Shown: positions 12,549-60,388, numbered from the stretch's first letter. The stretch is 64,000 nt of DNA from Octopus sinensis (GCF_006345805.1 NC_043011.1:67530464-67594463), one strand, 5' to 3'. Notes: generated by a model not told the origin, from the letters alone. Numbers and translations: made by a program.

Positions 12549-12648
12549 NNNNNNNNNNNNNNNNNNNNNNNNNNNNNNNNNNNNNNNNNNNNNNNNNNNN
12601 NNNNNNNNNNNNNNNNNNNNNNNNNNNNNNNNNNNNNNNNNNNNNNNN
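12549..12648. other. Assembly gap (100 N)
   Basis: Run of N. Confidence 1.
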
Positions 12649-36398: not shown

Positions 36399-36433
<35 letters not shown>

Positions 36434-39108: not shown

Positions 39109-39119
39109 TTATTATCACT

Positions 39120-39320
39120 GCGGAGGTGCATTGTGGTTAGGGTGTTGGACACATGATTGTATGACTGTGGTTTCGATTCCTGGGCTGGGTGATGCATGGT
39201 ATTCTTGAGTTAGACACTTTATTTCACGTTGTTCCAGTCCACTTGGGCTGGCAAAAACGAGCAATTTCGACCAACCAGTGCAATATAACTGGTATAACGC
39301 TGGAAAATCTGCCTGTTACT
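39120..39320 (+). mobile_element. SINE family C copy
   Basis: Head plus GACACTTTATTTCACGTTGTTCCAGTCCACT. Confidence 0.7.
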
Positions 39321-39379
39321 ATGAACGATCAGGCTTATTGGACGTCCTTTGTCTGAGTTCCTTTGTAAGAAAAAGAACT

Positions 39380-39561
39380 TGTCACAACCATTTGAAGGAG
39401 GCAAATCCTTGTGGGTCGTAGTTATCATTGTTCTCAGCAATAGTCAGTGAGGGGCCATCTCCTTGGTTTTCTTCTCTAAAGTTGTCTTCATTCACTTTTT
39501 CAGTTAGGTTGTCTGCCTCATCAGTGGAGTTTGTAGTATTTACTTAATTTCTTTCTGGTTT
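39380..39561 (-). other. Candidate downstream exon with acidic coding-like sequence
   Basis: Very strong acceptor ttttcttttactctttcAG. Frame 0 reads KPERN*VNTTNSTDEADNLTEKVNEDNFREENQGDGPSLTIAENNDNYDPQGFASFKWL*, with one early stop. Confidence 0.35.
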
Positions 39562-40149
39562 CTGAAAGAGTAAAAGAAAATGTGGTATTTGTATGTAAAT
39601 TATATATTAAGCATGGCTATGTTAACCAGAAACTTAAGATCAAAGTTAATATCGATAGCAATCATAGGTTACTGAATATGTTGAAGGAAAAAGTAAAGTT
39701 ATTAAATATCAATGGTATTCCCATAAAGCTGCAGAGAAAAGGGAAATACTTAGAGCAAACTGGAGGCAGAGCCTATATCTGTTGTATTTGTATCCCCTTC
39801 CTGTGCAGAAGTATCAGTCACACATCTGAGACAATACTTCAAATGTATTTATTCAAATCCTGAACAGTAATTTATAAAAAGGCAGAAAATCCTATGATAG
39901 TCCTTCACTCGTTCTTAAACTACTTTTCAATTAATTATATAACATCTATTTCTCTCTCCCACATTCTGTATCTCTCTCTCTCTCTCTCTGTTTCTCCCTC
40001 ATTCTGTCTACTTATACCTCTCTATATATACTATATCTTCACTACAATAATAATCCTCATAGGCAGTTATCCTGCATTTATTTTCATAAACTACATTACC
40101 ATCAACCCTCTGTCAAATCTGTCCCTTTAGCTCCTAACTTCATTATAAT

Positions 40150-40365
40150 AATCCTTTCTACTAAAGGCTCAAGACCTGAAATTTCAGCGTGAGGGGACTA
40201 GTCAATTACATCAACCCTGGTGTTTCCCTAGTACCTAATTTATGGACCCCGAAAGGATAAAAGGCAAAGTCAGCCTCGGCAGAGTTTGAACTTAGAACGT
40301 AATAGCAGATGAAATACCATGAAGCCTTTTGCCCAGTATGCTAATGATTCTGCCATTTCGCCTCC
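40150..40365 (-). mobile_element. SINE family B copy
   Basis: Family B motifs on the minus strand. Confidence 0.75.
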
Positions 40366-42519: not shown

Positions 42520-42596
42520 ATCTCCGAGGAGGCCTTATGATATTTTTGTAAATGTCTGAGACATACCTATCTACATGGCCGAAACAGCTGTAAGAT
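42520..42596 (+). ncRNA. Minimal hammerhead motif in a PLE pLTR (about 42100-42800)
   Basis: ATCT-CCGAGGA-GGCC...GGCC-GAAAC-AGCT-GTA-AGAT: 4-bp stems I and II, palindromic stem III, GUA triplet, U4C variant. Confidence 0.72.
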
Positions 42597-43039
42597 GTAA
42601 TCTATACTTATATTTGTATTTACTTATATGTATATTCTCTTTTTCATATATATTCTACTTATTATACAACATTACTCTTTTATGTACACTTTTTTATGTA
42701 CATTCCTTTATGTACACTGATTTGTTCTGCTTTTTATATCTAACCCTACAGTCTTTTATGTGGTGGTTCAATAAAGTATGTGATTGAGTATTATCTGGTA
42801 ATTGATATTTGATTTAGATATATTTCTCCATTTTCTTATCTTGTATTAGTAATTTGTGGTAAATCATTTTACCTTTGCCCATATAATACAGTAAATGAAT
42901 TGATTGCATCGCAATCCTTAACATTTATGTATTAACTTTGTTGGGTACTTCACTAGCAGTATATTGGATATATGTTATCCCATAGAGGGTTGCATTTACA
43001 ACCCCTATCTCAATTTGTATATATATCTATATGCATATA

Positions 43040-44400
43040 GATGGTTTTCTGTATTGCATTCAGAAACTGCAGATATGGTGTTTACATCCATTATCGAATC
43101 TCTGGCAGCATGTTTAATATCAGGTGCTTTGCTGCAAAAACAAAGGTATTTACCTCTATCATAAGAGACCTTTTGTATGCAGATGATTGTGAGCTAGTAG
43201 CACACACAGATTGATATGCAACACATTTTGAATGCATTCTCTGATGCTTGCACTGCTTTAGGACTGACAGTCAGTCTTATGAAAATTGTTGTCATGCCCC
43301 AGGTAAGAAGTATAGTGTACCAAATATCTATGTGTATGGTAAACGACTTGATGTAGTTGATCAGTTTGTCTACCTGGGAAGCACTGTTAAGAGATATAGC
43401 AATTTGGATGATGAAATTCCATACAGAATTAGGAAAGCAAGTGTTGCTTTCGGAAGGCTAGAAAGGCGCCTCTGGTGTCGGCGAGACATATGCAGAAAGA
43501 CAAAGATAAAGGTGTACAAGGCATGTGTGCTCCCTTCTCTTCTCTATGCCTGCGAGACGTGGGTCACATATCGATAGCACCTTAAACAACTGGAACGTTT
43601 CCATCAGATGTCCCTCAGACGGATCTATGGCATTGAGTGGGAGGACCATATCAGTGATCTTGAAATATTGGAAGGCTTTCAGTGTGAAAGTATAGAAGCT
43701 CTTGTGTTAAAGCAAAGGCTCAGATGAAGTGGTCATCTGATCAGGATGAAGGATTCGAGGATGCCAAAACAACTCTTTTATGGAGAGTTAGCTAAAGGAG
43801 AACGACCCCCACATAGACGAAAAGGACTTACTGAAGGCTTTCTTAAGAGATGCTTGCATCTCTCCTGACACATGGGAGGGCATAGCTATTGATCGTAGCA
43901 GGTGGAGAAGGATTGTGCACGAGGGGACGGCCACGTTTGAGAAATCTCGAGTTGCACATGAGAAAGTAAGGAGGGAATTCAGGAAGGGCATCGCTGTTAC
44001 ACTTCCAGATGGGAAGGGTCTTCTCATGATTCTGACATGCAATGTCTGTGCAAGACCCTGCCTCAGTAAAGCTGGACTCATGAGTCATCTTCGTAGTCAT
44101 AAAAAGAGATAGATGAGTGACAACCTGGCCACTGGTGGTGGTGTAACACACCATGCTAATCATATCTGTTGGGCATGTGGAAGAGAGTGTAATTCGGCAG
44201 GAGGACTTAAACGACATGCAAAGGTACATGAAGCCCAATTACAACTACAGCAGGCTATTTGCCAGTAACGGTTTTAGCTGCCAATTCTGTACAAGACATT
44301 GTAGATCTTTAGCTGGGCTAAAAAGTCACATTTGATCACAGCACCAGTAACAGCTAAGCTTCGTGCAATGGCCATACTCGTTAACGAGGGGGTAGCCATT
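43040..44400 (+). mobile_element. RTE/BovB-like LINE 3' fragment, degraded
   Basis: DLLYADDCELVAH, YLGSTVKRYSNLDDEIPYRIRKASVAFGRL, LLYACETW, C2H2-like CNVCARPCLSKAGLMSHLRSH and an RTE-type 3' end. Confidence 0.92.
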
Positions 44401-44414
44401 ATATATATGGATAT

Positions 44415-44520
<106 letters not shown>

Positions 44521-45288
44521 TGATAGATAGTTATAGATAGATAGATATATGTATATGTATATATCTATATATATTGAGGTGTTTGTATATACTTTAGCGT
44601 TTCAATATTACATTAGATAAAAATGTGGCATGTTATCCATCACCCCAACTTAGATTTCTTGGCAGCTCTCATCCCCTCCTTCTTCATCTGGCTGCAATTT
44701 GCTGTTTCATTGTGAAAGAAATCTCACATGTGAGACTGTGATCAATTCAGTCATTCATTTTGCTTGCTACCAAGAATGAAATATCAAACCTTTAGCTGGA
44801 TGTTACAGATTTTTCTCTCCTTCTCCTAAATATGTAATATACTTGTTTGCATGTTAAGGCACTTTCTCGGTGACTTAACTGTTCTCATCACTATCTTTTT
44901 CATCACTATGATTTTACACCACCAGCAGAAACTTAACAGATATCATGACATCTTTGACCATTTTCGTGAACACTATGACGGCAGAATTAAACCCTTGGCT
45001 AATATGAGAAATCATTCGCTTTCCATCTACAAGCTATTTAAGCAAATTTCCTGAATTATTTTAGCCTGGTAATTATGGTCGCTGATCACATCATATTGTC
45101 CACTGTCAGGTATAAATCTTAAAAGTTATTAATTTGAGTAAAGGCCTTTTTGAAGATTTGGATAATGGAATCTGCTGACAAGGTTTTCCATTATTAGCGA
45201 AATATAGTTAAGATGGCGGAATTAAGGAATTTATGAAACCACACACCTGTTTTATTTTCTCTCACTCTGTTTCTGGCTCTGTTACTAA

Positions 45289-45324
<36 letters not shown>

Positions 45325-45367
45325 ATATATATATACATATATATATATCTTACTCTCTTTCTCCCTT

Positions 45368-45442
<75 letters not shown>

Positions 45443-45946
45443 TCAATATCAGGGTAGCAAAAAATTCAAGAGAACTTTTTCGCCACCAGCGGTCCAGTGA
45501 GAAATATATTTCCTCATGGATATATATTTCCCTGGCCTCTTTGCTGACGAGACAGGCCAGTGGCAAATGGATTTAATTTAATTTAATTAAATCGGTTTGC
45601 CAATATGTATGTCGAAACTATGCATAGTCCAAAGATGATAAGGGTAAATGTTTTTATTTTCCTTTGGTTTCTGAATTACAACTATTTAGCGGTTTGAGTT
45701 TAGCTGCTCTTTCTAGTGGGTCGAATGGCTTATCAAGGCCATACCTTAATATTTTTGAATGTATAGTATATATATATTTAAATAATGAGGGTGATAAATT
45801 GAATATTAATTTAATTAATATCAATTTAAAACCAGTAGCCTAGCATATAAAAAATCTGAAAAATCAGAAAAAATTTCAATACATGTGTATAATTAGGGAT
45901 AACCATGATTAATTCTTGATTTTTATATAATTTTCATCTGTCTTAC

Positions 45947-46044
45947 CTGCTTATGTTCTGGTGTTTGCTGAATTTCTCCAGAGAACATTCTTTTCTTTGT
46001 AGTTAGATTGTATGTGATCTTCTTCTAGCATATTTGTTATCCAC
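45947..46044 (-). other. Candidate downstream exon of the BH3 gene (frame unresolved)
   Basis: Strong donor CAG|GTAAGA at 45946 and weak acceptor cctctAG. All three frames contain a stop from this acceptor. An internal acceptor (gctAG) gives an open phase 0-0 exon, KKITYNLTTKKRMFSGEIQQTPEHKQ. Confidence 0.4.
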
Positions 46045-46083
46045 CTAGAGGTTATCCCTAATTATACACGTATACATATATAT

Positions 46084-46115
<32 letters not shown>

Positions 46116-46607
46116 GTATATAGATAGACAGAGAGATAGATAGATAGATAGAGATGGATGGATGGACAATATATGTGTGTGTGTGTGTGGTAAGCATGTA
46201 TGTATAAAGAAAGCATCTAAATATGTGCGTGCTGTTCCAGCAAACTTCAGTGAGTGTGTGTGTGTGTGTGTGTGAGTGTGGGTGTGTGTGCATGCAGGCG
46301 CGTATGTTTGTGTACGAGTGAATAACTTAGTGTGTATAATTGTTATTTCGATTTAAATAGCATCAATTTAGATTGTATGTATATAAATTTAAGGATTAAA
46401 AAAGACAAGAAGAGATCCTACACAGTGTAACTGAAATACAGCATTTTATGTATCCATAGAACATCCTAAAATTCTAAAAGAACACACGGGCAACAAATAT
46501 GAAGTTTAAATTAAAATAAATTAATTTAGAATAGAACATAAATGAGGATGTTATCTTTTTTTGTGTTGTGAGACTAAAATTAAAAAAAGAGAAGGGATTA
46601 TTTTTAC

Positions 46608-46828
46608 CTGTAGAATTGGTGTTTGAATGTTTGATAACAAATTCTCAGCTGCTAAACGGAAGGTACCATATTGATTCAAATTAGAATCGTGTTGATGAAA
46701 AGCATTGTCGATCTCTGAACCATAACCTCTTTCTAATTCATCTGCAATTGTCCTTAAATTTTCTGCAACACCATCTATTATATCTCCTGTATCCCTTCCA
46801 CCTTGTAATTCCACTTGATGATATTTTA
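46608..46828 (-). CDS. Coding exon 3 of the Bcl-2-family gene, with BH3 motif DIIDGVAENLRTIADELERGY
   Basis: Acceptor cttttgctctAG, donor CAG|GTAAAA, 221 nt, phase 1 in and phase 0 out. L-x3-(A/G)-D-E BH3 pattern at 46731-46757. Confidence 0.85.
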
Positions 46829-46984
46829 CTAGAGCAAAAGATGCACAAAATTCATTCAAGTCAACAGAAATGTTTTGTAAAGAGGAAAGAAAATGCACAA
46901 TTTCCAGTGTTGCAATTTATTCCGAAACATTTTATTGCAATCAACTTACCTCTAATATTACTTCATGTTGAGTCTACTATTAGT

Positions 46985-47390
46985 CATACACGTGGCACAC
47001 TCGTGGCACATACTTGTGACACATGGTCGGTCACGAAAATGAGGGTTCCAGTTGATCTGATCAACAGAACAGCCGGCTTATGAAATTAACATATAAGTGG
47101 CCCTTAGTGTGCCCTTAATGTAGTTCTTGGGGAGATTCAGCGTGACACAGGGTGTGACAAGGCTGGCACTTTGCAACGCAGGTACAACAGAAACAGGAAG
47201 AAAGAGTGAGAGAAAGTTGTGGTGAAAGAGTGCAGGAGGGTTTGCCACCGCCCTCTGCCGGAAGCTCATGAAGCTATAGGTGTTTTCATTCAATAAACAC
47301 TTACAACGCCCGGTCTGGTAATCGAAACAGCAATCCTATGGCCACAAGTCCACTGCCCTAACCACTGGCCCATGGCACCTCCACAGTCAA
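46985..47390 (-). mobile_element. tRNA-headed SINE (family C-like head, different tail)
   Basis: Head GCCAGTGGTTAGGGCAGTGGAC...GTTTCGATTACCAGACCGGGCGTTG on the minus strand. Confidence 0.65.
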
Positions 47391-47919
47391 CATACTACAT
47401 CTTAACTGAAGGCTAACAGCTACACAGTACACTTGTACATGATATTGACTATTTTTCCTGAGAAATGAAACTGGTAATAGTGTACATTGGAACATACAGT
47501 AATGTGTTTTGAAACTATTTGATTGTAAGAAAATATTTTGGAATAATTTCAATAATTACAGTACAAAAGGAATTAATCTAGGATGACTTTGAAGTTGAGG
47601 CATCCTTCATCATTGAGTAAGAAGGTTGTCAATGTCCGCTTTTTCTCACCTACTGTTACCCCAAGACAACCATCAATGTAGCCAACTGTTGTGCCTCACT
47701 TATTAATCACACACCTGCTTTCAGCAACATAGCCTTGGTATGAGAAATTTATCCCTTCTCACAGTCCATCCACCACGTGACTACTCCAATACACGTCACT
47801 CAGCATCTTCCATTTCTCTATTCATGTTTGCTAATTCTCACATCATTTCTGAATACCTCTCTTCCATCAGATATGTCTGTACCCATGGCAACTTTCTGGT
47901 TTACAATTCTTTCACCTAT

Positions 47920-48140
47920 TTCTTTACTACTCACAAGGGGCTAAACACAGAGAGAACAAAGAAGGACAGACAAACAGATTAAGCTGATTATATCGACCCC
48001 AGTGCGTAACTGGTACTTATTTAATCAACCCCGAAAGGATGAAAAGCAAAGTCGACCTTGGCGGAATTTGAACTCAGAACATAGCGGCAGATGAAATACT
48101 GCTAAGCATTTCGCCCGGCGTGCTAACAACTCTGCCAGCT
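47920..48140 (-). mobile_element. SINE family B, near full length
   Basis: Head GTTAGCACGCCGGGCGAAATGCTTAGC, B box, central domain and tail. Confidence 0.85.
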
Positions 48141-48479
48141 AACCACCTTAAAATTCTTTCACCTGTTATCACACTGTTCCCGGGTATTTTACTTGTTCCT
48201 ACCACCATCAATACATTAATCTTCATATTCACTTAGAATGGGTCCAGACCAAAATTTCAATTCATAGATAACTCCATTTGTTTTCTCAAAACATAATGGC
48301 TTTCAGCATCTTTCTGTGAATTAGCATTTCTATGAAAAAACCGGTCAGCTAATATCCAATTACAGTCGGTGCCGGTACCATTACAAGGGAAAGACTTATC
48401 GCACGATAGTGTTGTAGATGGTCTGTAATTGTAAATGAAATGGAATGGCCAAATATAATGTCTTTGATCATATGGCCTT

Positions 48480-49925
48480 CAGATTTGGGATTACATAGAC
48501 AGTACTTTACGTAGGATATGGGCAGTTCCCATGAGCACTAGCTTTTGAATTTCTGTCATTCGGGGGTTTCCTAGTAGCTGAGCTAGGTAGCAATCAGCCC
48601 CTTTTGCTACCATTCCTAGGGCACCTATGACAACAGGTATTGTTTTAGTCTTGTGTTTCCACATTTTGCCAATTTCTGTTTCAAGATCTTTATACTTGCT
48701 TAGTTTTTGGTAGGGCTTAAAAAATACATTTATATCAACTGGGACAGTCATATCAATGAGGAGGCATGATTTTTGTCTGAAGTCTTTCAATATGATGTCT
48801 AACCTATTCACATCTGTCTTCCTGACAGTTGAACGGTGAAGTTCCTGTGGAGTGAGATGTAATCATTTTCAAGCACTGGAAGTGGTTTGTTTCCCACCAG
48901 TTTTTATCATGGGGCAGGTCCAAGTTTTTGCAAATTACCCAGTGAATTCACTGTGCTGCTCAATCATGCCCGTTGGGATATGCTGTAGGCGCAATAAGAC
49001 TGCACATGGAGACAACATGATCAATGGTTTCATTTTGTTGTTTACAGACACAACATGCTGGGCAACTGCTGTTCTTTAATATTTTGACCTGGTAGTTCCT
49101 TGATCTTGAATTGCTATGATAAATTATTATTATTATTATTCTATGTTTGACTTTTGCTTTATGTCTGTACAAGTTGGCTCCAAGTCTCACCCAGAGACCT
49201 CAAGAGACAACAGGTTGGAAGTTCTGTGCATTATATTAGGGGGGGGGGTGTTGTACTAGTGAATGTCTAATACATAAAAATAAAATTAAAAAAAAAAATT
49301 TTTTAAATAAAAAAAGTTTGTTTTAAACCTTGGGATTACATAGAGAGTATTTTGCGTAGGATATGAGCAGTTCCCATGAGCACTATCTTTTGAATTTCTG
49401 CCATTTTGGGGTTTCATGGTATCAGAGTTACATAGCAATCAGTCCCTTTCGTTATCATTCCCAGGGCACCTATGACAACAGGTATCGTTTTAGTCTTCAG
49501 CTTCCACATTTTGCTGATTTCTATTTCAAGATCTTTATATTTGCTCAATTTTTGGTAAGTCTTGACAGATACGTTTATATCGATTGGGACAGTCATATCA
49601 ATGAGGAGGCATGTTCTTTGTCTGAAGTCTTTCAATACGATGTCTGGCCTATTTGCATCTATCTTCCTGTCAGTTTGAATGGTGAAGTTCCAGAGGAGTG
49701 AGATGTGGTCATTTTCAAGCACTGCAGGTGGATTGTGTTCCCACCAGTTTTTTTCATGGGGCAAATCCAGGTTTTTGCAAATTACCCAGTGAATATATTG
49801 TGCAGCTCTATCATGCCTATTGAGGTACTCTGTAGGCGCTAGAAGACTGCATTTGGAGACAACATGATCAATGGTTTCATTTTGTTTTCGGCATACACAT
49901 GTTAGGCTACTGCCGTTCTTTAATA
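48480..49925 (-). mobile_element. Two head-to-tail R4/Dong-like REL-endonuclease fragments separated by (AAT)n
   Basis: Each copy has C..C...ETIDHVVS.C, RHD, NRPDIVLKD, LLIDMTVP and IPVVIGALG. Copies at 48480-49100 and 49141-49950. Confidence 0.88.
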
Positions 49926-49953
49926 TGTTGGCCTGGTAGTTTCTTGTTTCTTG

Positions 49954-50000
<47 letters not shown>

Positions 50001-51474
50001 TATTATTATTGAGTGAGAGAGCAGTGCATGCCATCAAAGTGACTCTGGGGTAAAATATACAAAGCCCAGTATACCCATCATGACTACCCGTCTGATAAGG
50101 GTGCACTAAGTACATGCATCACAACCATATGTGCGTAGCATGATGATCTCATATCAAGATAAACAGCACATAACTTTGCAGGTGGGGTCCAGTTAGAATT
50201 TCCCGCTCAAAATGTCCCTGAATAAGGGTTGTTTAAGGATGTTGAACGAAACACCCATGTTTCCAGAGGTGAATTATTCAAACCCCAAAGAATCCCTCTC
50301 AATACATGGCTATGATGCTCACCCACTACTTCTGCTCGTGATCAGAGATGCATATATCATCAGCCACTAATGGACATGCTCAACTGGTTACGGTCAAACT
50401 TCTTCTTCTTTTCTTCTTGGCATTCTATTCCAATCTCTTTCAGCCATTTGTCTATATAGCTTTGCTTACTGTTCTCGTACTTTCAGGGTCAATAAAATAA
50501 GTACCAGTTGAGCATCAATTGCATCAGAGAATTTCAGTAGCCTAGTTCCCTCCTCAATACAAGAACCAAATTTGTTGCCTCCATGCATGCCATAAAAGCC
50601 AGCTGGTTGCTGTCCAACATCCCCATTGAAGTCACAAGCCAGAAAGAGAAGGTCTCTGTCATTCGCTGATGAGATTTTTTTTCTATTCATCAGGCAGGAA
50701 ATCTTGGCTGAGGGGCCGAGATAATGTTAGCTCTTCCATGTTGCAACACTAGTCTAAGCTTGAGTATTCTATCACTCACTCTGACTACATCGATTACCTT
50801 ATCAACCCATTTCTCAGCTAGCGGAATGCCCACGCCCCCAAAACCATCACTGTTGCCTACCTAGAAGATTTTATACCTATGCTCTTACCCTGTGAGGAAC
50901 CTAGTAGAACCTTCTCTCCACCTTTGTTCTTGGATGCAATGCACATCTACATGCCTCCATTCAAGCATTTCAACAATCGCGCTAGACCTACCTTTCAATG
51001 TGCCCACATTGAGAGTGTGGAATGTGTAGGCTGGGGAGACACATGGATGGGAGTAGTACCTTAATCAATGTATACTGATTGAATAAATGATTCACAGTTT
51101 TAATTATCGTCCCTGAAATTGTGAGTTTGATTAATGCTGAAGTAGAATATTGGGAGACAGTGAAACAGATAGAAACAATAAATAAAATAATTGTGACTTA
51201 ATATATTGTGCATGCGTACACGTTCAGAGTTCAAATGTCGATTATATTAACTTTGCCTTTCATCCTTCTAGCATCGATAAAATTAAGAACCAGTCAACTA
51301 TCATGGTGAAAGGTATCGACTATGACCCCACCCCAAAAGAACTGTGCCTACATTAGAAAATATATATTTTGTAGCCTCTAGAAGAATTGCAGTTGTGCCT
51401 ACATTAAAGGTAACTAATATTAAAGATAATTAACAAAGGAAACCAACATTAAAAGGTAACTAAACACCACTTAC

Positions 51475-51584
51475 TAGACCCAGCACTTAGGGCGAGGGCT
51501 CTGGGGTAGGTTTTCTTAGGTACTTGTAAATATTTCTGCAAGAGTTCTTCAACATTATTAATAATATCAGCTGGTTGCAAGCCC
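51475..51584 (-). CDS. Coding exon 2 of the Bcl-2-family gene, GLQPADIINNVEELLQKYLQVPKKTYPRALALSAGS (BH4/alpha1-like helix)
   Basis: Acceptor atctatttcAG, donor A|GTAAGT, 110 nt, open frame. Phase 2 in and phase 1 out, matching both neighbouring exons. Unique sequence among repeats. Confidence 0.8.
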
Positions 51585-51633
51585 CTGAAATAGATATGTA
51601 TACAAGGAAAATTATAGAAACATAGATTGATAA

Positions 51634-51680
<47 letters not shown>

Positions 51681-54624
51681 TGTTTCTTTATTAGCCACAC
51701 AGGGCTGCACACAGATAGAACAAATTACAAGGTAGAGCTTTTCTTTTCAAGGTTTAAAAAAAAAAAAAAAAAGGAAGGGGGAGTTTCGATCAAAAGGGAT
51801 CGTAAAAGGAGAGAAAGAGGACAAAAAAAAGGGGGGTTAAAAAAAAGGCGGAGAGGAAAAAAAAAAAAAATTGATCAATAGGGATCGTTATCACAGAAAT
51901 GTCAATATGAAGTGTAAAGGGGAGGACAGATGAGGTTTACCCGTGGAAAGAAAAGCCTACGGAAAAGACCACGGTAACCTCGGTCAATGAAGTCACATTT
52001 TATATTTTTTTTTTTTTTTTTTTCAAATAAGCAACTCTCTGTTTTCGATTTCTGGGTTCATAGGACTATGCTCAAGGTGGCTTTGTCATTCATACGTGCC
52101 ATTCTTGCTACATTCACCCATCTTTTTTTAAAACATTCGCTAGACAAAACTTGCCTCTCTACTCTCACTTTCCTTTTCAAGTGGTACTTGAAGAAGTTGA
52201 TGAGAGATTGACCAGAGAGGAAAGTGTTTGTCTCCAATCCTTTCAGACGCGTCCACCAGATGAAAATAGCTCTTCCTTCCCGTTTGAAGGAAGGAGGCGT
52301 GACAATATTGACGATAGACTCAGCTGATAAACCGACTCGTCCCACACGTGACAGCAGTTGTTCGACATAAGCCCACAGGTCGGAAATTGTTGGACACTGA
52401 ACGAGTGCGTGCAGAACGGTTTCGTCGCTCTGACCGCATCTCGGGCAGGTCGGCCCCGTGTTTCTCGACCCGTGTCTGTAGAGCTTATCCCGAATGGGTA
52501 GCGCTTCTCGGTAGCACAGCCAGGCCAGGGAGCTCTGGAAGTTGTCCATGGGCCCTGGCCCGAAAGTCGTCCTGAACAGGCGGGTCAGGTACTCCTCGTC
52601 GACGTCCAGGTTCGCCCCGAGCTCGTCGTCGTACCTCTCCTCCACTAAAGCCCTATAGAATGCTTTGGTTGTGTTGAAGTCACTTAAGGTCGACCCAGGA
52701 CGGCAGAGTTGCTTGAGAGCAACGCGACACTCGCGGTGCCATTCGCCCTTCCTCGGCCTCTTTTTGATCCACGACTGCAGTTCGGTCATGGAGACGAGCT
52801 GCGGGAAAGCGTGCCTCACAAACGGCGACCACACATGTTCACCGTCGTCTACATAGACCAGAGATGTCGCAGTCTCAGCGCGTGTCTGCGCATCATCAAC
52901 CACGGCATGCCCAGCCCTCCTTTTAACGGGTGTTGACAGCAAATGGATCGCCTGACCATCGGGACGCATCCTTTCCACAAGAAGCGAAAGAGGATGCGTT
53001 GTAGTTTGGTGATGGTAGGGTCGGGACAAGGTACGACGGTCAGGCGGTAGTAGATGACGGACGCGATGTACGTGTTCGCCACCTCCGCTCGACCTTTTAG
53101 GGACAGTTTCCTCTCGGCCCATTGCCGGGCAAGTGTGACCACCCTACTCGTTATCTCGTTCCAGTTCTTCTCCACTTGGAGGTCCGGACCAAACCAGACC
53201 CCGAGCAACTCAACCGGGCCGTCGGTCCAGCGTCCCACGACGGAGGCGCTGGTGGACGGCATGGGCTTGCTTCTCCAGGTGCCTAGTCGCAAGCCCACTG
53301 ACTTTTCCCGGTTGATTTTCGCTCCTGTCACCGCTTCGTAGTTTTTCAGTGTCTCGCCGACCAGCTCGAAGTACTCGTGGCTAGACACTATGACGGTGAC
53401 GTCGTCCGCGTATGCAGACACGCTCATCCCGCATCCCAATTCTCGCGGGATGCCCCTCAGAGTCGCCAGCTTCCGCAGTAGTGGCTCAAGAGTCAATACG
53501 TATAGAAGCGCCGAGAGGGGTCATCCCTGACGGATCGAACGTGCAATGTCGAAAGGTCTCGATAGATGTCCATTTACGCGAATTACCGAACGGATGCCTC
53601 TGTACAAGGCAGCTATCCAGCCGCGGAAGACGGGACCGAAACCAGCCGCTCTCAGGACTGCCTCCAAGTATCGATGGTCTACCCTATCAAAGGCTTTCGA
53701 TTGATCCAAGTTGATCAGGGCCCCACCCATGCCAGGTTCGTTAACTACCCTGTCTATGATGTAGCGCATCAGATGGAGGTTGTCATGGATGGTCCGGCCT
53801 GGCACGGCGCATGTTTGCGCCTTGTCGACCAGTTTCTCGATGACAAGCGCCAACCTCTTGGCTAACACCTTGGCCAAAATTTTCAAGTCTGCATTAAGCA
53901 GAGTGATGGGCCTAAAGTTATCTATTACATTTCCCTTGTTTAGATCTTTCTTCAGCAGTGTTACGGCTCCTCGGCTCACAAAACCAGGAATGCTCCCGTT
54001 TTGCTGCCAGTTGCAGTACACCGCCGCCAAGAGATCTCCAAACAAGTCTGGCATACAATTGTAAAGCTCGTAGGGTAGACCATCCAAACCTGGTGATTTG
54101 TCCCTCAAGCATTCTGCCATCGCTTCCCGCACTTCCGCCGCCATGATGGCACCTTCGCAGCACCCTGCCTTTCTTGTCGAGAGTCGTGGTAGGCTATGTA
54201 GGTAGGCACTGAAGTCCACCTTACGTTCTTGCCCTCCACTCGTTCCGAACAGTCGGGCAAAATGCTGCTGAAAGGCCTCACACATTTTACTTGGCTCGAG
54301 CAATTCGCGCCCCTGTTCATCTACCAGTGACCGAATGGTGGCTTTGTTGCCCTGTTGCGCCTCTGCCACCCGGGCCTCTCTCGCGGCTCCAACACCTTCG
54401 TTCCTTAGAGCACGCATCCTAGCTCTGACAGCACATCCTTCGTGTTTGGCGTTGAAGTGTTGGTCGAGGGCCAACCTCGCCGCCAAAACGTCGGATGCGA
54501 TGCCGCTTCTAATTGCCTCTTCTAGCTTCTTAACTAGCTCACCCTCTACTCTATTTCTATCTATGGCTAGTGCTTTGCTGTACCTAATCGCTTCTGCTTT
54601 TACTGCTCTCTTGAGGGCAAACCA
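51681..54624 (-). mobile_element. Tx1/L1-clade LINE, 5'-truncated, inserted in (GATA)n
   Basis: KSPGLDGL, NFRPITLLNADLKIL, DQSKAFDRV, RQG*PLS (nonsense), YADD and CPRCGQSDETVLHALVQC; 3'UTR ending AATAAAGAAACA; (GATA)n on both sides. Confidence 0.95.
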
Positions 54625-54665
54625 GATAGATAGATAGAGAGATAAAGAGATAGATAAATAGATAT

Positions 54666-54742
<77 letters not shown>

Positions 54743-54993
54743 GAGATAGATAGAGAGATAGATAGATAGATAGATAGAGAGATAGATAGATAGATAGAGA
54801 GATAGATAGAGAGATAGATAGAGAGATAGATAGAGAGATAGATAGATAGATCATCATCATTCTTTAATGTCTGCTTGCTATTCTAGCATGGGTTAGATGG
54901 TTTCACTACAACTATTAAGCTGGAGAGCTACACTAGGTTACTATCCAATTTGACATGGTTTCTATAGTTGGATGCCCATATATATATATATAT

Positions 54994-55188
54994 AAAATTA
55001 TAATTTAGGGTATCTAAAAGATACCGCCATGCTGAAAATAGCAGCCAAAATCTGACTCTAAAACCACATTAAATGTTCATACAGCACATGTGCTGTATGA
55101 ACATTTAATGTGGTTTGGTTTTAGAGTCAGATTTTGGCTGCTATTTTCAGCATGGCGGTATCTTTTAGATACCCTAAATTATAATTTT
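54994..55188. repeat. Loop-less palindrome, 95-bp arms
   Basis: Centre CAGCACA|TGTGCTG at 55088/55089; perfect except an extra GGTTT in the right arm. The arm resembles the single-orientation sequence at 22425-22515. Confidence 0.95.
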
Positions 55189-56215
55189 AATAATAATTAT
55201 TACCTTTGAAGGTTTTTATTTCCCTGCTGGCCACTTGATAAGATCGATATTTAATCTAAATTTTTCTGTATTTAATTTAAATACAGAAAAGTAGCATCAA
55301 CATTTGCACCACTAATGAACAACCAAGCTTCAGAATTTTTCCCTCTATAAATTCAGAGACAATACAACTTGTAGTCAACACATTAGCAAAGATTTATATT
55401 TTATCACAAAATATAAACCCCTTTTGAATGCTTCCACCATAAATGACACTACTACAAGGGCCTTAGAATGATACCCACACAAATATTAAAAATGATATAT
55501 TCAGAACAGTCACTACCCATGAATTTATTCAGAACAATTCCAATCACTACTATTACAACCACAACAGCTCACTTTTCGGTCCCTTGACCATTTAAGAGGA
55601 TTCCACCAACATCCTCTATCATACACTCCTGTATTTTTAGTATTCTTTCTCTTCTTTTCCTACTCTCTCTTCTTCTTCTTCTTCATCTTCTTCATCTTTT
55701 TTCTCACCGCCTCCTAACTCAGTTACTACTGCTGCTTAAACAATCAAAACCAAGAACTCATATCAAATATTCTTCTAGGATTACTACTACCTACTACCTG
55801 CTACCAAGCCATCAAAAGACTAAAAAGATAAAGACAGACAGACAGAAAAAAGGAAAATGTCCCTTGTATTTGAAAACTATGGAAATATTTTAAAAAGCAT
55901 TTCATTTAATTTTTCCACAAGTTTATTGTTTTTCATGCTTTACTCTAAAGCTTATTTGATGACATAAAGTGGTCGTCTTGATTAAGACCAATCTTGTTGT
56001 TATTAAGCCCCAGGAGAACATCACCTGACAGTAAATCAAAACCATTTAATTCCAAGGTTTATGTTTAACAACTGAATGAATTTAATAAAAGCATCAAAAT
56101 ATGAAACATCATGAAAATTGTTCAAACTGAAGTCCTTCTTGAGTGACACATTTTCCCATTTGAGTCAATACAGAATTACAGAGAGTATTTATAGACTTTT
56201 GGCCAACCCTATATA

Positions 56216-56474
56216 TCTATATATATAAAATAAAGTGTCCATTTAAACACATAGGAATTCCTTACGCTAGAAAGAACAGCTAAAGTCCAAACTGCTAATT
56301 AGGGATAAATTCTTGAAGGGAATGAAAAATAAAAACATTTACCATTAGTGGTTTGGACTTTGGCTGTTCTTTCTAGCATAAGGGATTCCTATGATGGAAA
56401 TCTCTTAATGTATTTAAATGTACACTGTATTTTAGATGAATAATATATTTTCTATACGCTAGGCCACTGGTAGT
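56216..56474 (+). mobile_element. Short Helitron-like element with an internal 49-bp inverted repeat
   Basis: 5' TCTATATATATAAAA; IR 56251-56299 / 56344-56392; degenerate 3' end. Confidence 0.5.
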
Positions 56475-56529
56475 AAAAATTTCTAAAATCTTTATTACCC
56501 TCATATTAATTATATAAAATAAAGGATAT

Positions 56530-56692
56530 AGGCACAGGAGTGGCTGTGTGGTAAGTAGCTTGCTAACCAACCACATGGTTCCAGGTTCAGTCCCACTGTG
56601 TGGCATCTTGGGCAAGTGTCTTCTGCTACAGCCCCGGGCTGACCAATGCCTTGTGAGCGGATTTGGTAGACGGAAACTGAAAGAAGCCTGTC

Positions 56693-56748
<56 letters not shown>

Positions 56749-56985
56749 TGTGTGTGTGTGTGTGTATGTGTGTCTGTGTTTGTTCCCCTAGCATTGCTTG
56801 ACAACCGATGCTGGTGTCTTTACGTCCCCGTCACTTAGCGGTTCGACAAAAAGAGACCGATAGAATAAGTACTGGGCTTACAAAAAGAATAAGTCCCGGG
56901 GTCGAGTTGCTCGACTAAAAAGCGGTGCTCCAGCATGGCCACAGTCAAATGACTGAAACAAGTAAAAGAGAAAAGAGTAAAAGAG
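56530..56985 (+). mobile_element. SINE family A, full length
   Basis: Complete head, core, microsatellite and tail. Confidence 0.9.
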
Positions 56986-57754
56986 TATATGTGTCTCTCT
57001 GTGTTTGTCAAGTCATTAAAACTTGAGATCTACTCGACCGATTTTAATGAAATTTTATACATGTATTACACAGGGTCCATGGAGTATCATGGGCCAAAAC
57101 ATTTTTTAGCTTCTTGCCTAATGTGGGTGCAGGGGCATTATTTAACTGCATTATTTAAGCATTTCGCTGCATTAAGGCTGGTAACTTGAAGAGTATCCAG
57201 TTGCTTTCTGCCAAATTTGCAACAAACATTAATCAGGCTCCTCGAGCTGTTAACTAAAAACATTTCCAACGCTGACTCATGCACTGGGTTTTATCTTTGT
57301 TTCAGGCCATTTTCCCATGATGAAATATTGACACTACTTATGCATTATAAGAAGCTTATAATATTTCATGGAAAGCTTTCTGTCTAATTTAGCAGAAGAA
57401 ATGAGAAGATTAAAATTTTTGTCGGCGCCTTGTTGATGTTTCATGTTACCATCCCACGCATCACCGGGCCATGTGTGTGTGTGCAGCTGGGTAGAGGTGC
57501 AACAAACCCATTCATCCATTCTCCAGAAGTGCCCTGTTGATGTTTCACGTTTCCAATCCTTCGCAATGTAGCATGGCCCGGCAGTATGTCTGCTTTCTAT
57601 GTAATGCAAAATGTTCATATAAAAAAAAAATGCTGTTGTGACTCACAGCTATTTGAATCTGACCATGCGACCAATTCCGGAAGCTACGCTCGCCACCTGC
57701 AAACAGCCCCCACCTCCCTGTATTCCCTCCCCCGTTTAGTCGGACGAGTGAATA

Positions 57755-58090
57755 CAGGGTGTCTCAGAATTAATGATTATTTGAAAGAAATCGGATGCAT
57801 TTTTTAAAACTGACTTTTATTTATATTTATTATGTTTAATATGTATTAAAAGTGTATAAATTTTTTAATTTTGTTTATAATTTTATCTTCCTTCCAGTTG
57901 AACCCCTCCCGTTTGTCCATGACACCTTCTTTTTCAATTTGGCAGCAATCGTTTTCTTTACCTCCATTCCCCAAGATGGAGCGAACGTTTAGCAGTGCAG
58001 CAGCTAACTCCTGAAATGCTTCAAAGTGTGTTTCACTAAGGAGAGATTTGAAGTATGCAAAGACACAGACATGTTGAAAATTTTCAATAA
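57755..58090 (+). mobile_element. Tc1/mariner remnant
   Basis: TA|CAGGGTGTC terminus; C-terminal fragment AVQQLTPEMLQSVF...HVE. Confidence 0.5.
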
Positions 58091-58147
58091 ATGTTTAACG
58101 TAAGATTTATAAATCTTTTTTGTTTTGGTAATAAACACAAACTTCTG

Positions 58148-58536
58148 TCATATATATAAAGCTGAAGTTGTCTGTGTATGGCAGGTTTGGTAGCCTTCAA
58201 CTACCACTATCTCCTCCGAGACCCAGTGGCACAAGTTGACCAAAATTGAGAGTATGATAAAAGAAGGCTTGCTCTTCCTTCTGTCGAAGAAAAAATTCAA
58301 ATCGGACCATGTTAACGCCAAAAATTATTTACATCAAAAAGGTACTTTTTTTGTATGAAAATCCCTATTTTTTACAATTTTTTGACTGCTGTGTCGCCAT
58401 TTTTCGGTGTATTTCAACCAGAAAAATATTCACTTTAAGAAAATATCAAGCTACATAATGCAAAATTTTTACTTTTCAAAAATTCCAATTCTGAAGGGTC
58501 AAAACAAACCCGAGCAATGCCAGGCAATACTGCTAG
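58148..58536 (+). mobile_element. Non-autonomous Helitron (second family)
   Basis: 5' TCATATATATAAAGCTG; 3' CCCGAGCAATGCCAGG imperfect hairpin followed by CTAG|T. Confidence 0.75.
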
Positions 58537-58702
58537 TATATATATATATATATACACATATATATCTCTTCTCTTCTCACGTGAACTTTCACCTAATTAA
58601 ATACACTCTCCCTTACTTAAATTATTTTGTCAGCATTTTCTTCATTTCCTTTTTTTATATATCACAACTCGTGCTCCACATCTCCTTTTTTAAATATATA
58701 TA

Positions 58703-58749
<47 letters not shown>

Positions 58750-59087
58750 AAAGTGAGATAGGGGTTATGAGTGTAACCCACTATGAGATATCAGTTATCC
58801 AATATACTGCTAGTGAAGTACCCAAAAGGCTAATACATAAATGCTAATAATTGCCATGCAATTAGTTCATTTATTGTATTAGATGGGCGAAGGTAAGATA
58901 TTTTACCTCAAAATCATAATACAAATAAGAAAATGGAGGAACAGATTCCTTTCAATCATCGACTTACAGATATTACCAATTCATATTATTTATTAACTAC
59001 TTAAATAGGAACATCCAAATCCAACAGAATAAAACAATATACATCAATAATTAAGATAATACCATAAAAATAATACATATAAAATGG

Positions 59088-59215
59088 ATCTAACAGCTGT
59101 TTCAGCCTGTAGATAAAGGTATCTCATTGTGCCTATATTAGTCATATGTATTGAGGTAATATGCAGTTAAAAATGAGTTACTTATATATATATATCTCAA
59201 GGCCTCGTCAGAGAT
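59088..59215 (-). ncRNA. Minimal hammerhead motif, same family as 42520-42596, sense to the BH3 gene within intron 1
   Basis: ATCT-CTGACGA-GGCCT...AGGCT-GAAAC-AGCT-GTT-AGAT: canonical core, G.U-closed stem II, GUU triplet. Confidence 0.7.
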
Positions 59216-59569
59216 TATAAAGTACAATTATAAAAATATAAAATGTAAATATAAATATGAAACAAAATACACATACACAAGAATCATCATCATCATCGTT
59301 TAGCGTCCGCTTTCCCAGCTGGCATGGGTTGGACGGTGCAACTGGGGTCTGGGAAGCCAGAAGGCTGCACCAGGCCCAGTCTGATCTAGCAATGTTTCTA
59401 CGGCTTGAGCCCCTTTCTAACGCCAACCACTCCATGAGTGTAGTGGGTGCTTTTTACGTGCCCCCGGCACAGGTGCCAGACGCGGCTGGAAAACAGCCAC
59501 GATCGGATGGTGCTTTTTATGTGATGATTGAAAGAAATCTGTCTCCATTTTCTTATTTGTATTATATAT

Positions 59570-59613
<44 letters not shown>

Positions 59614-59707
59614 CATACATACATACATACATACATACATACATACACACGCACGTAAGTACGTACGTACGTATGTATGTATGTATGTAAGTAAGTAAGT
59701 AAGTAAG

Positions 59708-59738
<31 letters not shown>

Positions 59739-60022
59739 GTAAGTAAGTAAGTAAGTATGTATGTATGTATGTATGTATGTATGTATGTATGTATGTATGT
59801 ACGCATGCATGTATTGATTTATTGATTTGCATTTCTGAAACAAAGCATTATTTCGGTGCCTTTAATTTCTGAATTCCAACCTCACTGAATCCAACTTTGT
59901 TTATCTTGGATTCGATGTAAATGAAATAAAACTTTGGTTCAGCCTCGGATTAATGCTGTCGACTGACTCTAAAGGAAGTATTAAAACCGATAAAAGGAGA
60001 AGAAAAATAGTTATCTACTTAC

Positions 60023-60045
60023 TGATTAACCATGGCACTCGACAT
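60023..60045 (-). CDS. Coding exon 1 of a Bcl-2-family (BH3-containing) gene, MSSAMVN(Q); 5'UTR part of the exon 60046-60098
   Basis: ATG at 60045 with an in-frame TAA upstream. The exon has acceptor ttttctacAG (60100-60099) and a perfect donor CA|GTAAGT. Its phase 2 end matches the next exon. Confidence 0.72.
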
Positions 60046-60388
60046 GACAGCTTTGAAATTACCAAGACAGAATTAAATGGGAACGAATGTTTTCGAAGCT
60101 GTAGAAAACACAAGAGAATTATATAAAGAAAGCTGCCAAATTCATTTAGAATTTCGTAAACAGGAATATTGTGATGTTAATAAAATGTTCATTAATTAAT
60201 ATTCAGTTTTGTTAATGATTAGTGTTAAACTAAGGAAAGTGAAGCACACGGTAACCTGGATTTGGAGTTGAATTTCAAAATATAATTACAGTAAGTACCA
60301 GGGGTTATCTCCCTTGCATTACCAGAGACTAAATATTGCAACTTCGTTTCAATTTACACCCAACCGTCTGAAAACTGGTACACATTAA

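What the first reader, a model, noticed from the sequence alone, without database searches (positions are those of the whole stretch)
46608..60098. Hidden spliced Bcl-2-family gene with a Bid/Bcl-G/Bfk-like BH3 region
Seen: three short unique islands, each with good splice sites, join in matching phases (2 then 1) across introns of 8438 and 4646 bp. They encode MSSAMVNQGLQPADIINNVEELLQKYLQVPKKTYPRALALSAGSIKYHQVELQGGRDTGDIIDGVAENLRTIADELERGYGSEIDNAFHQHDSNLNQYGTFRLAAENLLSNIQTPILQ. Knowledge: LRTIADELE fits the BH3 consensus, and DIIDGVAENLRTIADELERGY parallels human BID [21 protein letters not shown]. Inference: a divergent, possibly Bid-like apoptosis regulator; such proteins are poorly characterised in molluscs. 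The ORF track shows only pieces of it.
Basis: partly seen in the sequence, partly recalled or inferred. Interest (0 to 1): 0.8.

Follow-up and report, generated by a model that had tools for sequence, protein, structure and literature searches.

The report
Tail-less BAK-derived octopus Bcl-2-family gene
The spliced gene is real: it is an annotated but unnamed octopus gene encoding a small, fast-evolving relative of the cell-death protein BAK that keeps the BH3 "death" helix but has lost its membrane anchor, so it is built like vertebrate Bid/Bfk without being their relative.

Summary
The three exons exist exactly as described and join in frame on the minus strand. Exon 3 ends in a splice donor, and two more coding exons (41179..41054 and 39561..39544) complete a 165-aa protein. 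That protein is identical to RefSeq "uncharacterized protein LOC115219865" of Octopus sinensis, and Octopus vulgaris has a 96%-identical orthologue. A HMMER scan of 1.84 billion proteins found one real relative, the head-to-head neighbour LOC115219866. Neither protein reaches a Pfam threshold. The neighbour alone, and a profile of the pair, hit only BAK among all PDB sequences (E 1.6e-5 and 8e-5). Profile-profile comparison gives BAK 87% probability, against 2-6% for BID, BFK, BAX, BOK and Bcl-xL. The match covers helices alpha1-alpha4, including a consensus BH3 (VAENLRTIADEL). The C-terminal third has no detectable similarity: there is no NWGR motif and no membrane anchor. It does end in DGTW followed by a phase-0 intron, the Bcl-2-family hallmark. 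The gene is therefore BAK-derived by descent and Bfk/Bid-like only in architecture. Its function as a soluble BH3 donor is inferred, not shown. Seven nonsynonymous against one synonymous difference between the two octopus species show no purifying selection.

The parts
60023..60098 (-). First coding exon. The ATG is at 60045..60043 and the CDS runs 60045..60023 (MSSAMVNQ, phase-2 donor CA|GTAAGT). 60098..60046 is a putative 5' leader that follows an AG acceptor at 60100..60099.
   Evidence: the acceptor is read from the sequence only
51475..51584 (-). Coding exon 2 (residues 8-45): helix alpha1 (ADIINNVEELLQKYL) and the start of the disordered loop.
   Evidence: aligned to BAK alpha1
46608..46828 (-). 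Coding exon 3 (residues 45-118): the rest of the loop, the BH3 helix, alpha3 and alpha4. It ends in the donor CAG|GTAAAA (phase 0).
46782..46793 (-). DTGD (residues 57-60), a DxxD motif at the boundary between loop and helix, immediately before the BH3. It is a candidate caspase site (inference only).
   Evidence: conserved in O. vulgaris, absent from the paralogue
46734..46769 (-). BH3 motif V65-L76, VAENLRTIADEL (h1 V65, h2 L69, h3 I72, A73-D74, h4 L76).
   Evidence: aligns with BAK VGRQLAIIGDDI
41054..41179 (-). Coding exon 4 (residues 119-160): the predicted alpha5 and alpha6 helices and the BH2-like RYIRDHFTPDGTW. It ends exactly after the Trp codon (41056..41054) with a phase-0 donor TGG|GTAGGT.
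39544..39561 (-). Last coding exon: KPERN plus stop, after the acceptor TTTCAG. The 3'UTR continues below 39544.
   Evidence: the same 18 nt are present in the paralogue
52061..54486 (-). Non-LTR retrotransposon fragment (RVT_1 and zf-RVT ORFs) inside intron 1. It is not part of the gene product.

Best explanation
The locus is a real five-coding-exon gene (window 60045..39544, minus strand; O. sinensis LOC115219865). It encodes a 165-aa, all-helical, highly diverged member of the Bcl-2 family that descends from a BAK-type pro-apoptotic gene. It has one paralogue, LOC115219866, lying head-to-head at least 26 kb away. No other relative was detectable.

Shown here: it keeps BAK's alpha1, a roughly 30-residue disordered loop, a consensus BH3 helix, and alpha3-alpha4. 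It lacks the BH1 NWGR motif and any C-terminal membrane anchor. It ends five residues after a Trp that is followed by the phase-0 intron typical of the family's BH2 (GGW).

Inferred: it is a soluble, cytosolic protein whose BH3 is held in a compact helical bundle. When the bundle opens, the BH3 docks into the groove of octopus Bcl-2-like or BAK/BAX-like proteins and tips mitochondria towards permeabilisation. Opening might follow cleavage in the loop, perhaps at DTGD60. This is a Bid/Bfk-style mechanism reached independently from a BAK duplicate. The protein is evolving fast: 7 nonsynonymous against 1 synonymous change versus O. vulgaris.

The confidence given is for the whole statement. For the shown part alone (a real gene, BAK-derived, Bcl-2 family, tail-less) I would put it at about 0.85. 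For the inferred pro-death BH3-donor mechanism I would put it at about 0.35.
For: Gene model: splice sites, phases and translation. Exact identity to XP_029646019-21, and the same model in O. vulgaris.

Family: an exhaustive HMMER scan gives the paralogue at E 1.4e-10. The paralogue alone hits BAK in the PDB at E 1.6e-5 over residues 8-100 against BAK 8-104. The two-sequence profile hits 22 BAK entries at E 8e-5 to 3e-3 and no other full-length protein family below E 0.5. hhalign against a BAK alignment gives Prob 86.6%, E 4.5e-6, residues 13-110 against BAK 25-120. The real score is 42.5, against 12.8 +/- 2.2 (maximum 20.7) for 300 column-shuffled BAK alignments.

BH3: the strict pattern is found once, at residues 65-76, and occurs in 0.35% of shuffles of the protein.

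BH2 intron: exon 4 ends after W160 in phase 0. BAK1 likewise has a phase-0 intron after GGW. PMC8998228 calls this boundary highly conserved.

No anchor: the maximum 19-residue hydropathy is 1.15, against 2.44 for BAK. No TM-like exon lies downstream.

Fold: AF2 with 3 sequences gives pTM 0.60, six helices and a disordered loop at 30-59. Of the top 50 Foldseek PDB hits, 48 are Mcl-1, Bcl-2, Bcl-xL or Bak. The viral library gives only noise.

Long-term constraint: exon 3 still aligns between the paralogues (68%), while apart from one 135-bp match the only flanking intron matches are retroelement sequence.

Mechanistic analogy: Bfk and Bid lack BH1 and a TM, and release their BH3 after caspase cleavage in the loop before it (PMC8814693).
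Against: Pfam PF00452 is far below threshold (12.3 bits against 31.4 on the 118-aa piece) and absent on the full protein. The query protein alone finds no BAK in the PDB, so the link to BAK runs through the paralogue. The C-terminal third has no detectable similarity to BAK, BOK or Bcl-xL (Prob <1%), so BH2 rests on position, a 39%-identical 18-column match to Bcl-xL, and the intron. Only 1 of 4 intron positions matches vertebrate BAK1. The AF2 model is low-confidence (pLDDT 62) and no Foldseek hit reaches E 0.1. No relative was found outside Octopus. pN 0.018 exceeds pS 0.009 and roughly matches or exceeds the intron divergence of about 1%, so recent purifying selection is not visible. The paralogue carries a frameshift in exon 4. 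No transcript-derived copy was seen in the protein collection. No expression, binding or killing data exist, so direction (pro- or anti-death) and any cleavage are pure inference.
Confidence: 0.55

Rival explanations
1. The pair are lineage-specific BAK duplicates in decay. They may be transcribed but are functionally dead or dying remnants that have lost BH1, BH2 and the TM. The ORF is intact only because too little time has passed.
For: 7 nonsynonymous against 1 synonymous difference to O. vulgaris. The CDS diverges by 1.6% against about 1.0% for introns. The paralogue has a 1-nt deletion that shifts the frame of its BH2-like end. There are no relatives outside Octopus, no Pfam hit, and no transcript-derived cluster members.
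Against: ORF and all eight splice sites are intact in both species. The paralogues are old enough that introns 1-3 no longer align, yet exon 3 does, and both keep alpha1, the BH3 and an almost invariant alpha4-alpha5 segment (LNxY..F..AA..LLS.IQ.P.LQL.AVFE.C.RYTS). None of the 7 replacements falls in residues 95-135 or on a BH3 hydrophobic position.
Confidence: 0.2
2. It is a soluble inhibitor rather than an activator. A tail-less BAK look-alike could cap activated BAK/BAX dimers or soak up BH3-only ligands, and so dampen apoptosis.
For: It retains the BAK core helices alpha2-alpha5 that mediate BH3-in-groove dimerisation. It lacks the anchor and the latch helices needed for pore formation. 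The paralogue's BH3 has Asn in place of the conserved Asp.
Against: Without NWGR and alpha8 the canonical groove is probably not formed. The known tail-less, BH1-less family members (Bid, Bfk) are pro-apoptotic (PMC8814693). No data exist in either direction.
Confidence: 0.15
3. It is a true orthologue, or a member, of the vertebrate Bid / Bfk (BCL2L15) / Bcl-G (BCL2L14) lineage.
For: Size and layout match human BFK: 163 aa ending GGW+ENLES against 165 aa ending GTW+KPERN. It has a BH3, no BH1, no TM, and DxxD motifs in the loop before the BH3. BFK appears at ranks 14 and 24 in the Foldseek search of the weaker model.
Against: hhalign gives BFK 3.9% (BH3 only) and BID 2.3%, against BAK 84-87% under the same conditions. 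The profile search of the PDB lists neither BID nor BFK at E<=10. Bid is reported only from Chondrichthyes onwards (PMC8998228). Bcl-G was not tested.
Confidence: 0.07
4. It is a chance set of ORF fragments or a gene-prediction artefact with a fortuitous BH3-like motif.
For: BH3-like short motifs are common in proteomes (general knowledge). No RNA evidence was examined here.
Against: Two independent annotations give the identical model. There is a paralogue with the same exon structure. Similarity to BAK is significant over about 95 residues, well beyond the motif.
Confidence: 0.02

Closest known systems
BAK (BAK1, Bcl-2 homologous antagonist/killer)
   Same: It is the only family with significant sequence similarity, covering alpha1, the loop, the BH3, alpha3 and alpha4 (octopus 13-110 against BAK 25-120). 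The BH3 is VAENLRTIADEL against VGRQLAIIGDDI. Both have four coding introns, including a phase-0 intron right after the BH2 Trp.
   Different: There is no NWGR/BH1. Alpha6-alpha8 are shortened or absent and there is no C-terminal transmembrane helix. Three of four intron positions and phases differ from vertebrate BAK1. The C-terminal third is unrecognisable by sequence. It therefore cannot be a membrane-anchored pore former of the BAK type.
Bfk / BCL2L15 (PDB 7ccl)
   Same: Architecture and probably mode of action. Both are about 165 aa, soluble, and have a BH3 plus a BH2-type Trp five residues from the C-terminus. Both lack BH1 and a TM and have a flexible loop before the BH3. Bfk is proposed to release its BH3 after caspase cleavage (PMC8814693).
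   Different: There is no significant sequence similarity (hhalign 3.9%, BH3 only). The octopus BH2 is degenerate (DGTW, no WIxxxGGW). Descent appears to be from BAK, so the resemblance is convergent.
BID
   Same: Both are globular helical proteins with a buried BH3, no BH1, no TM, and an acidic DxxD-containing loop upstream of the BH3.
   Different: There is no similarity beyond the motif (hhalign 2.3%; absent). BID has no BH2 and is known only in jawed vertebrates (PMC8998228).
N-Bak and other truncated BAK/BAX isoforms (from my own knowledge)
   Same: These are BAK-derived products that keep the BH3 but lose BH1, BH2 and the TM, and behave as BH3-only-like molecules.
   Different: They are splice variants of the canonical gene. 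Here the truncated form is fixed as separate, duplicated genes with a distinct C-terminal helical region.

Membership tests
Bcl-2 family (Bcl-2 fold, Pfam PF00452) | Significant sequence similarity to an accepted member that extends beyond the BH3 motif | tested here: met
   The paralogue hits BAK at E 1.6e-5 and the pair profile hits BAK at E 8e-5. hhalign gives Prob 86.6% with score 42.5, against a shuffled maximum of 20.7. The link between query and paralogue is E 1.4e-10 in 1.84e9 proteins.
Bcl-2 family (Bcl-2 fold, Pfam PF00452) | Pfam Bcl-2 model at or above the gathering score | tested here: not met
   12.3 bits against a cut-off of 31.4 on residues 1-118. There is no hit on the 165-aa protein or on the paralogue.
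Bcl-2 family (Bcl-2 fold, Pfam PF00452) | BH3 motif: hydrophobic-x3-L-x2-hydrophobic-[GAS]-D-x-hydrophobic, on an amphipathic helix | tested here: met
   VAENLRTIADEL at residues 65-76. It occurs in 0.35% of shuffles, lies inside predicted helix 58-94, and aligns to the BAK BH3.
Bcl-2 family (Bcl-2 fold, Pfam PF00452) | BH1 motif (NWGR) at the start of alpha5 | tested here: not met
   The colinear alignments to BOK and Bcl-xL place NIQTPILQL at that position. There is no Trp, Gly or Arg.
Bcl-2 family (Bcl-2 fold, Pfam PF00452) | BH2 motif (WIxxxGGW) with the exon ending at the conserved Trp (phase 0) | tested here: inconclusive
   The intron is met: exon 4 ends after W160 in phase 0, as in BAK1 and as described in PMC8998228. 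The motif is only partial: RYIRDHFTPDGTW, and KYIRDTFTSGGNW in the paralogue DNA. The C-terminal profile shows no significant similarity.
Bcl-2 family (Bcl-2 fold, Pfam PF00452) | Globular bundle of 7-8 helices around a central hydrophobic alpha5 | tested here: inconclusive
   AF2 gives pLDDT 61.7, pTM 0.60 and six helices. Foldseek's top hits are almost all Bcl-2-family, but with E 0.15-1 and TM 0.33-0.45.
BAK subfamily (multi-domain pore former) | C-terminal transmembrane anchor, plus BH1 and the alpha6-alpha8 latch | tested here: not met
   Maximum 19-residue hydropathy is 1.15 against 2.44 in BAK. There is no TM-like downstream exon. The protein ends 5 aa after W160.
BAK subfamily (multi-domain pore former) | Groups with BAK rather than BAX, BOK or pro-survival members | tested here: met
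   hhalign Prob: BAK 84-87%, against BOK 6.3%, BFK 3.9%, BAX 2.7%, BID 2.3% and Bcl-xL 1.8%. No phylogeny with cephalopod BAK was possible.
BID | Sequence similarity to BID outside the BH3, including the pseudo-BH4 ECIxNxLxxxFL | tested here: not met
   hhalign gives 2.3% and BID is not listed at E<=10. The alpha1 sequence ADIINNVEELLQ matches only I, N and two conservative positions of the pseudo-BH4 (by inspection).
BID | Caspase cleavage in the loop before the BH3, which releases an active fragment | not testable with these tools
   DTGD60 and DIID63 are present at the end of the predicted disordered loop. Cleavage itself is untested.
Bfk/BCL2L15 and Bcl-G/BCL2L14 | BH3 + BH2 architecture without BH1 or a TM; a short soluble protein | tested here: met
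   165 aa, BH3 at 65-76, a Trp 5 aa from the end, no NWGR, no TM. Human BFK, verified against 7ccl, is 163 aa ending GGWENLES.
Bfk/BCL2L15 and Bcl-G/BCL2L14 | Detectable sequence homology to BCL2L15 or BCL2L14 | tested here: not met
   BFK: hhalign 3.9% over 39 columns around the BH3 only, and absent. Bcl-G was not tested because no sequence was at hand.

The most novel reading that the evidence does not exclude
Octopuses independently turned a BAK duplicate into a soluble, loop-cleavage-licensed 'Bid/Bfk-type' death ligand, and then duplicated it again. The pair is evolving under positive selection, for example in conflict with pathogens. This would be the first globular Bid-like BH3 protein outside vertebrates and a living example of how Bid-type proteins can arise from pore-forming ancestors.
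Probability: 0.25. Interest if true: 0.7.

Novelty: new variant of a known kind. Interest (0 to 1): 0.5.

Why it matters
Globular, BH3-bearing, anchor-less Bcl-2-fold proteins (Bid, Bfk, Bcl-G) are regarded as vertebrate inventions. BH3-type triggers in molluscs are essentially uncharacterised. Surveys of lophotrochozoan Bcl-2 genes did not include cephalopods in their Bcl-2 trees (PMC11463336), and such surveys rely on recognisable BH1/BH2 domains, which this protein lacks. A BAK-derived protein with Bfk/Bid architecture offers a concrete, testable case of convergent origin of a 'death ligand' from a pore former. It would also add two members to the octopus apoptosis toolkit that domain-based annotation misses. 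If instead the pair are decaying duplicates, they still mark a recent birth-and-death episode in a gene family usually treated as stable.

Tried and rejected
- Pfam on the full 165-aa protein and on the paralogue gave no Bcl-2 hit, only sub-threshold noise: Rep_fac_C, FecR_C, and Bclx_interact at E 0.12.
- phmmer of the query alone against the PDB returned only chance hits, an NTF2-like protein and SART3.
- The second hit of the exhaustive HMMER scan, P0003 (627 aa, E 4e-4), is a bacterial-type tandem-repeat protein matching through repeated 'YGTFSLAANG' units. I rejected it as spurious.
- The word-indexed search with the pair profile added no relatives.
- Single-sequence AF2 was poor (pLDDT 50). 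The 3-sequence run was better but still low.
- Foldseek against viral structures gave only noise.
- I looked for an alternative downstream exon encoding alpha8 plus a TM. There were three hydrophobic ORF candidates, and none was convincing.
- hhalign of the C-terminal third alone against BAK, BOK and Bcl-xL found nothing (Prob <1%). It also offered a competing, non-colinear match of DHFTPDGTW to BH1 (F..G.NWG). I rejected that because the N-terminal alignment already places BH1 near residue 115.
- The idea that all intron positions would match BAK1 failed: only the BH2 intron does.
- The supplement of PMC8998228 was searched for its Octopus BH3-only candidate and held nothing.
- A look-up of the paralogue's 154-aa isoform was not on record. 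The 237-aa isoform X1, oddly named 'zinc finger protein 318', was used instead.

Full report
**Observation.** The window is repeat-rich cephalopod DNA. It matches Octopus sinensis chromosome CM016873.1 at about 67,530,464-67,594,463, minus-strand gene.

They give 354 nt and exactly the 118-aa peptide quoted. That peptide is 100% identical over its whole length to residues 1-118 of RefSeq 'uncharacterized protein LOC115219865' (XP_029646019-21, 165 aa).

Position 46608 is followed by GTAAAA, a donor. Exon 4 lies at 41179..41054 and a tiny last exon (KPERN plus stop) lies at 39561..39544 behind a TTTCAG acceptor. The coding gene therefore spans 60045..39544, with introns of 8438, 4646, 5428 and 1492 bp. 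The introns are littered with non-LTR retrotransposon fragments.

An independent annotation of O. vulgaris (CAI9735861.1) has the same five coding exons. The flanks of all exons align without gaps at 98-100%.

**Relatives.** A filter-only HMMER scan of 1.84 billion representative proteins found one real relative, at E 1.4e-10 and 35% identity. The only other hit is a bacterial repeat protein that I regard as spurious.

The real relative is LOC115219866 of the same species. Its CDS begins about 26 kb beyond this gene's ATG, and the two genes lie head-to-head.

Neither protein has a precomputed Pfam domain.

**Family assignment.** The query alone finds nothing relevant among PDB sequences. The paralogue alone hits BAK at E 1.6e-5 (residues 8-100 against BAK 8-104). 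A profile of the pair lists 22 BAK entries at E 8e-5 to 3e-3, then BH3 peptides of Bak, Bim and Bik, and no BID, BFK, BAX or pro-survival protein at E<=10.

I retrieved real BAK, BOK and Bcl-xL sequences. I also verified typed human BID and BFK against 2bid and 7ccl. Profile-profile results were as follows.

| Target | hhalign result |
|---|---|
| BAK family | Prob 86.6%, E 4.5e-6, octopus 13-110 against BAK 25-120 |
| Human BAK alone | Prob 83.8% |
| BOK | Prob 6.3% |
| BFK | Prob 3.9% (BH3 only) |
| BAX | Prob 2.7% |
| BID | Prob 2.3% |
| Bcl-xL | Prob 1.8% |

Against 300 column-shuffled BAK alignments the score distribution was 12.8 +/- 2.2 with a maximum of 20.7. The real score is 42.5.

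The aligned block contains alpha1, the variable loop, the BH3 and alpha3-alpha4. The BH3 is VAENLRTIADEL against BAK VGRQLAIIGDDI. Alpha3-alpha4 share the Y after the BH3 and N.Y..F...A..L. The strict BH3 pattern occurs once in the protein, and in 0.35% of shuffles.

**C-terminal third.** Here the evidence thins. Taken alone, residues 101-165 show no detectable similarity to BAK, BOK or Bcl-xL (Prob <1%). This holds even with the paralogue read conceptually through its frameshift.

Where colinear alignments place BH1, the octopus protein has NIQTPILQL and no NWGR.

The end of exon 4, RYIRDHFTPDGTW, resembles Bcl-xL's YLNDHLEPWIQENGGW only weakly. The paralogue DNA reads KYIRDTFTSGGNW at this position. 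However, the exon stops exactly after the Trp in phase 0. That is the boundary described as highly conserved across the family from sponges to mammals (PMC8998228). I confirmed the same boundary in a primate BAK1 locus (after GGW177, phase 0). The other three introns differ from BAK1 in position or phase.

After the Trp come only five residues. There is no hydrophobic tail: the maximum 19-residue hydropathy is 1.15, against 2.44 in BAK. I found no convincing alternative TM exon downstream.

**Structure.** AlphaFold2 with the three available sequences gives pLDDT 61.7 and pTM 0.60. It predicts helices at 12-26, 58-94, 100-109, 115-132, 134-137 and 141-153, and a disordered loop at 30-59.

Foldseek finds no significant PDB match. 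Even so, 48 of the top 50 hits are Mcl-1, Bcl-2, Bcl-xL or Bak (E 0.15-1, probability up to 0.84, TM 0.33-0.45). The single-sequence model behaved similarly and also listed human BFK. The viral library gave only noise. I treat the fold as compatible but not demonstrated.

**Evolution.** Against O. vulgaris there are 7 nonsynonymous differences and 1 synonymous difference (pN 0.018, pS 0.009). Large intron blocks differ by about 1.0%. By my own calculation from those counts, purifying selection of omega about 0.2 is excluded at roughly p = 0.01, while neutrality is not rejected.

Three of the seven replacements lie in the disordered loop. None lies in residues 95-135 or on a BH3 hydrophobic position.

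Between the paralogues, exon 3 still aligns at 68%. Apart from one 135-bp match, the only flanking intron matches are retroelement sequence, which argues for long-term constraint. Exon 4 plus its downstream intron is 75% identical. The last exon plus 3'UTR is 87-96% identical, suggesting 3' gene conversion.

The paralogue has a 1-nt deletion in exon 4. As a result its annotated C-terminus is out of frame, and the identical 18-nt last exon is read as GNQKEIK* instead of KPERN*.

**Interpretation.**

- Shown: this is a real, annotated, domain-less gene. It is homologous to BAK over alpha1-alpha4 with a consensus BH3. It has lost NWGR and the membrane anchor, and it has the BH2-type exon boundary.
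- Inferred: it is a soluble protein that uses its BH3 in the usual BH3-in-groove way.

Its layout is strikingly that of human Bfk: 163 aa, BH3 plus BH2, no BH1 or TM, ending GGW+5. [quoted passage not shown]

The octopus protein has DTGD60 and DIID63 at the end of its predicted loop, and both are conserved in O. vulgaris. I therefore favour a Bid/Bfk-like, activation-dependent pro-death role. I hold that only at about one chance in three. A dominant-negative role, or decay, remains open.

On membership the tests point to BAK descent and not to Bid or Bfk. Bid is reported only from jawed vertebrates. Lineage-specific duplications of pro-apoptotic members are already known in lophotrochozoans (PMC11463336).

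**Verdict.** I found no paper describing these genes. Interest is moderate. It is a new architectural variant of a known family in an under-studied phylum, with uncertain function and signs of very fast evolution.

Noticed in passing
window 60059-60098 (minus strand); L003/L005 in O. vulgaris: The O. vulgaris annotation has a separate 172-aa gene model on the same strand. Its stop codon (TAA, window 60061..60059) lies 14 nt upstream of this gene's ATG, inside the same exon. The 5' leader may therefore carry a long upstream ORF (ending ...FENIRSHLILSW*), or the transcript was split into two models.
   Followed up: partly
L001 64296-64421 and 68172-68189 (paralogue LOC115219866): Exon 4 of the paralogue has a 6-nt in-frame deletion and a 1-nt deletion relative to this gene. 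Its annotated C-terminus (NTFVILSLQVVTGNQKEIK) is therefore a frame-shifted reading of DNA that would otherwise encode KYIRDTFTSGGNW+KPERN. It is unclear whether this is a real mutation or an assembly error.
   Followed up: partly
window 39109-40070 vs L001 67698-68817; window 40563-41190 vs L001 64291-64925: The 3' ends of the two head-to-head paralogues are 87-96% identical over about 1 kb (last exon plus 3'UTR). Exon 4 plus its downstream intron is 75% identical, whereas exon 3 is only 68% identical. Possible explanations are gene conversion between inverted copies or a shared inserted element.
   Followed up: partly
window 52061-54486 (-), 35066-36430 (-), 23218-24281 (-): ORFs with reverse-transcriptase (RVT_1) and zf-RVT domains, representing non-LTR retrotransposon fragments. 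One sits in intron 1 of the gene and the others lie downstream of it.
   Followed up: yes
window 43915-44335 (+): Three short overlapping ORFs, in different reading frames, carry C2H2-like zinc-finger motifs (C..C...........H...H) inside intron 3. There is no Pfam hit at E<=0.001, and they are probably part of a degraded mobile element.
   Followed up: partly
window ~12541-12650: A run of N (an assembly gap) shows up as X in an ORF translation.
   Followed up: no
P0005 (XP_036365697.1): Isoform X1 of the paralogue is named 'zinc finger protein 318' in RefSeq. Its extra 83 N-terminal residues are low-complexity (poly-P, poly-L, poly-T) and contain no zinc finger, so the name looks like an annotation artefact.
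   Followed up: no
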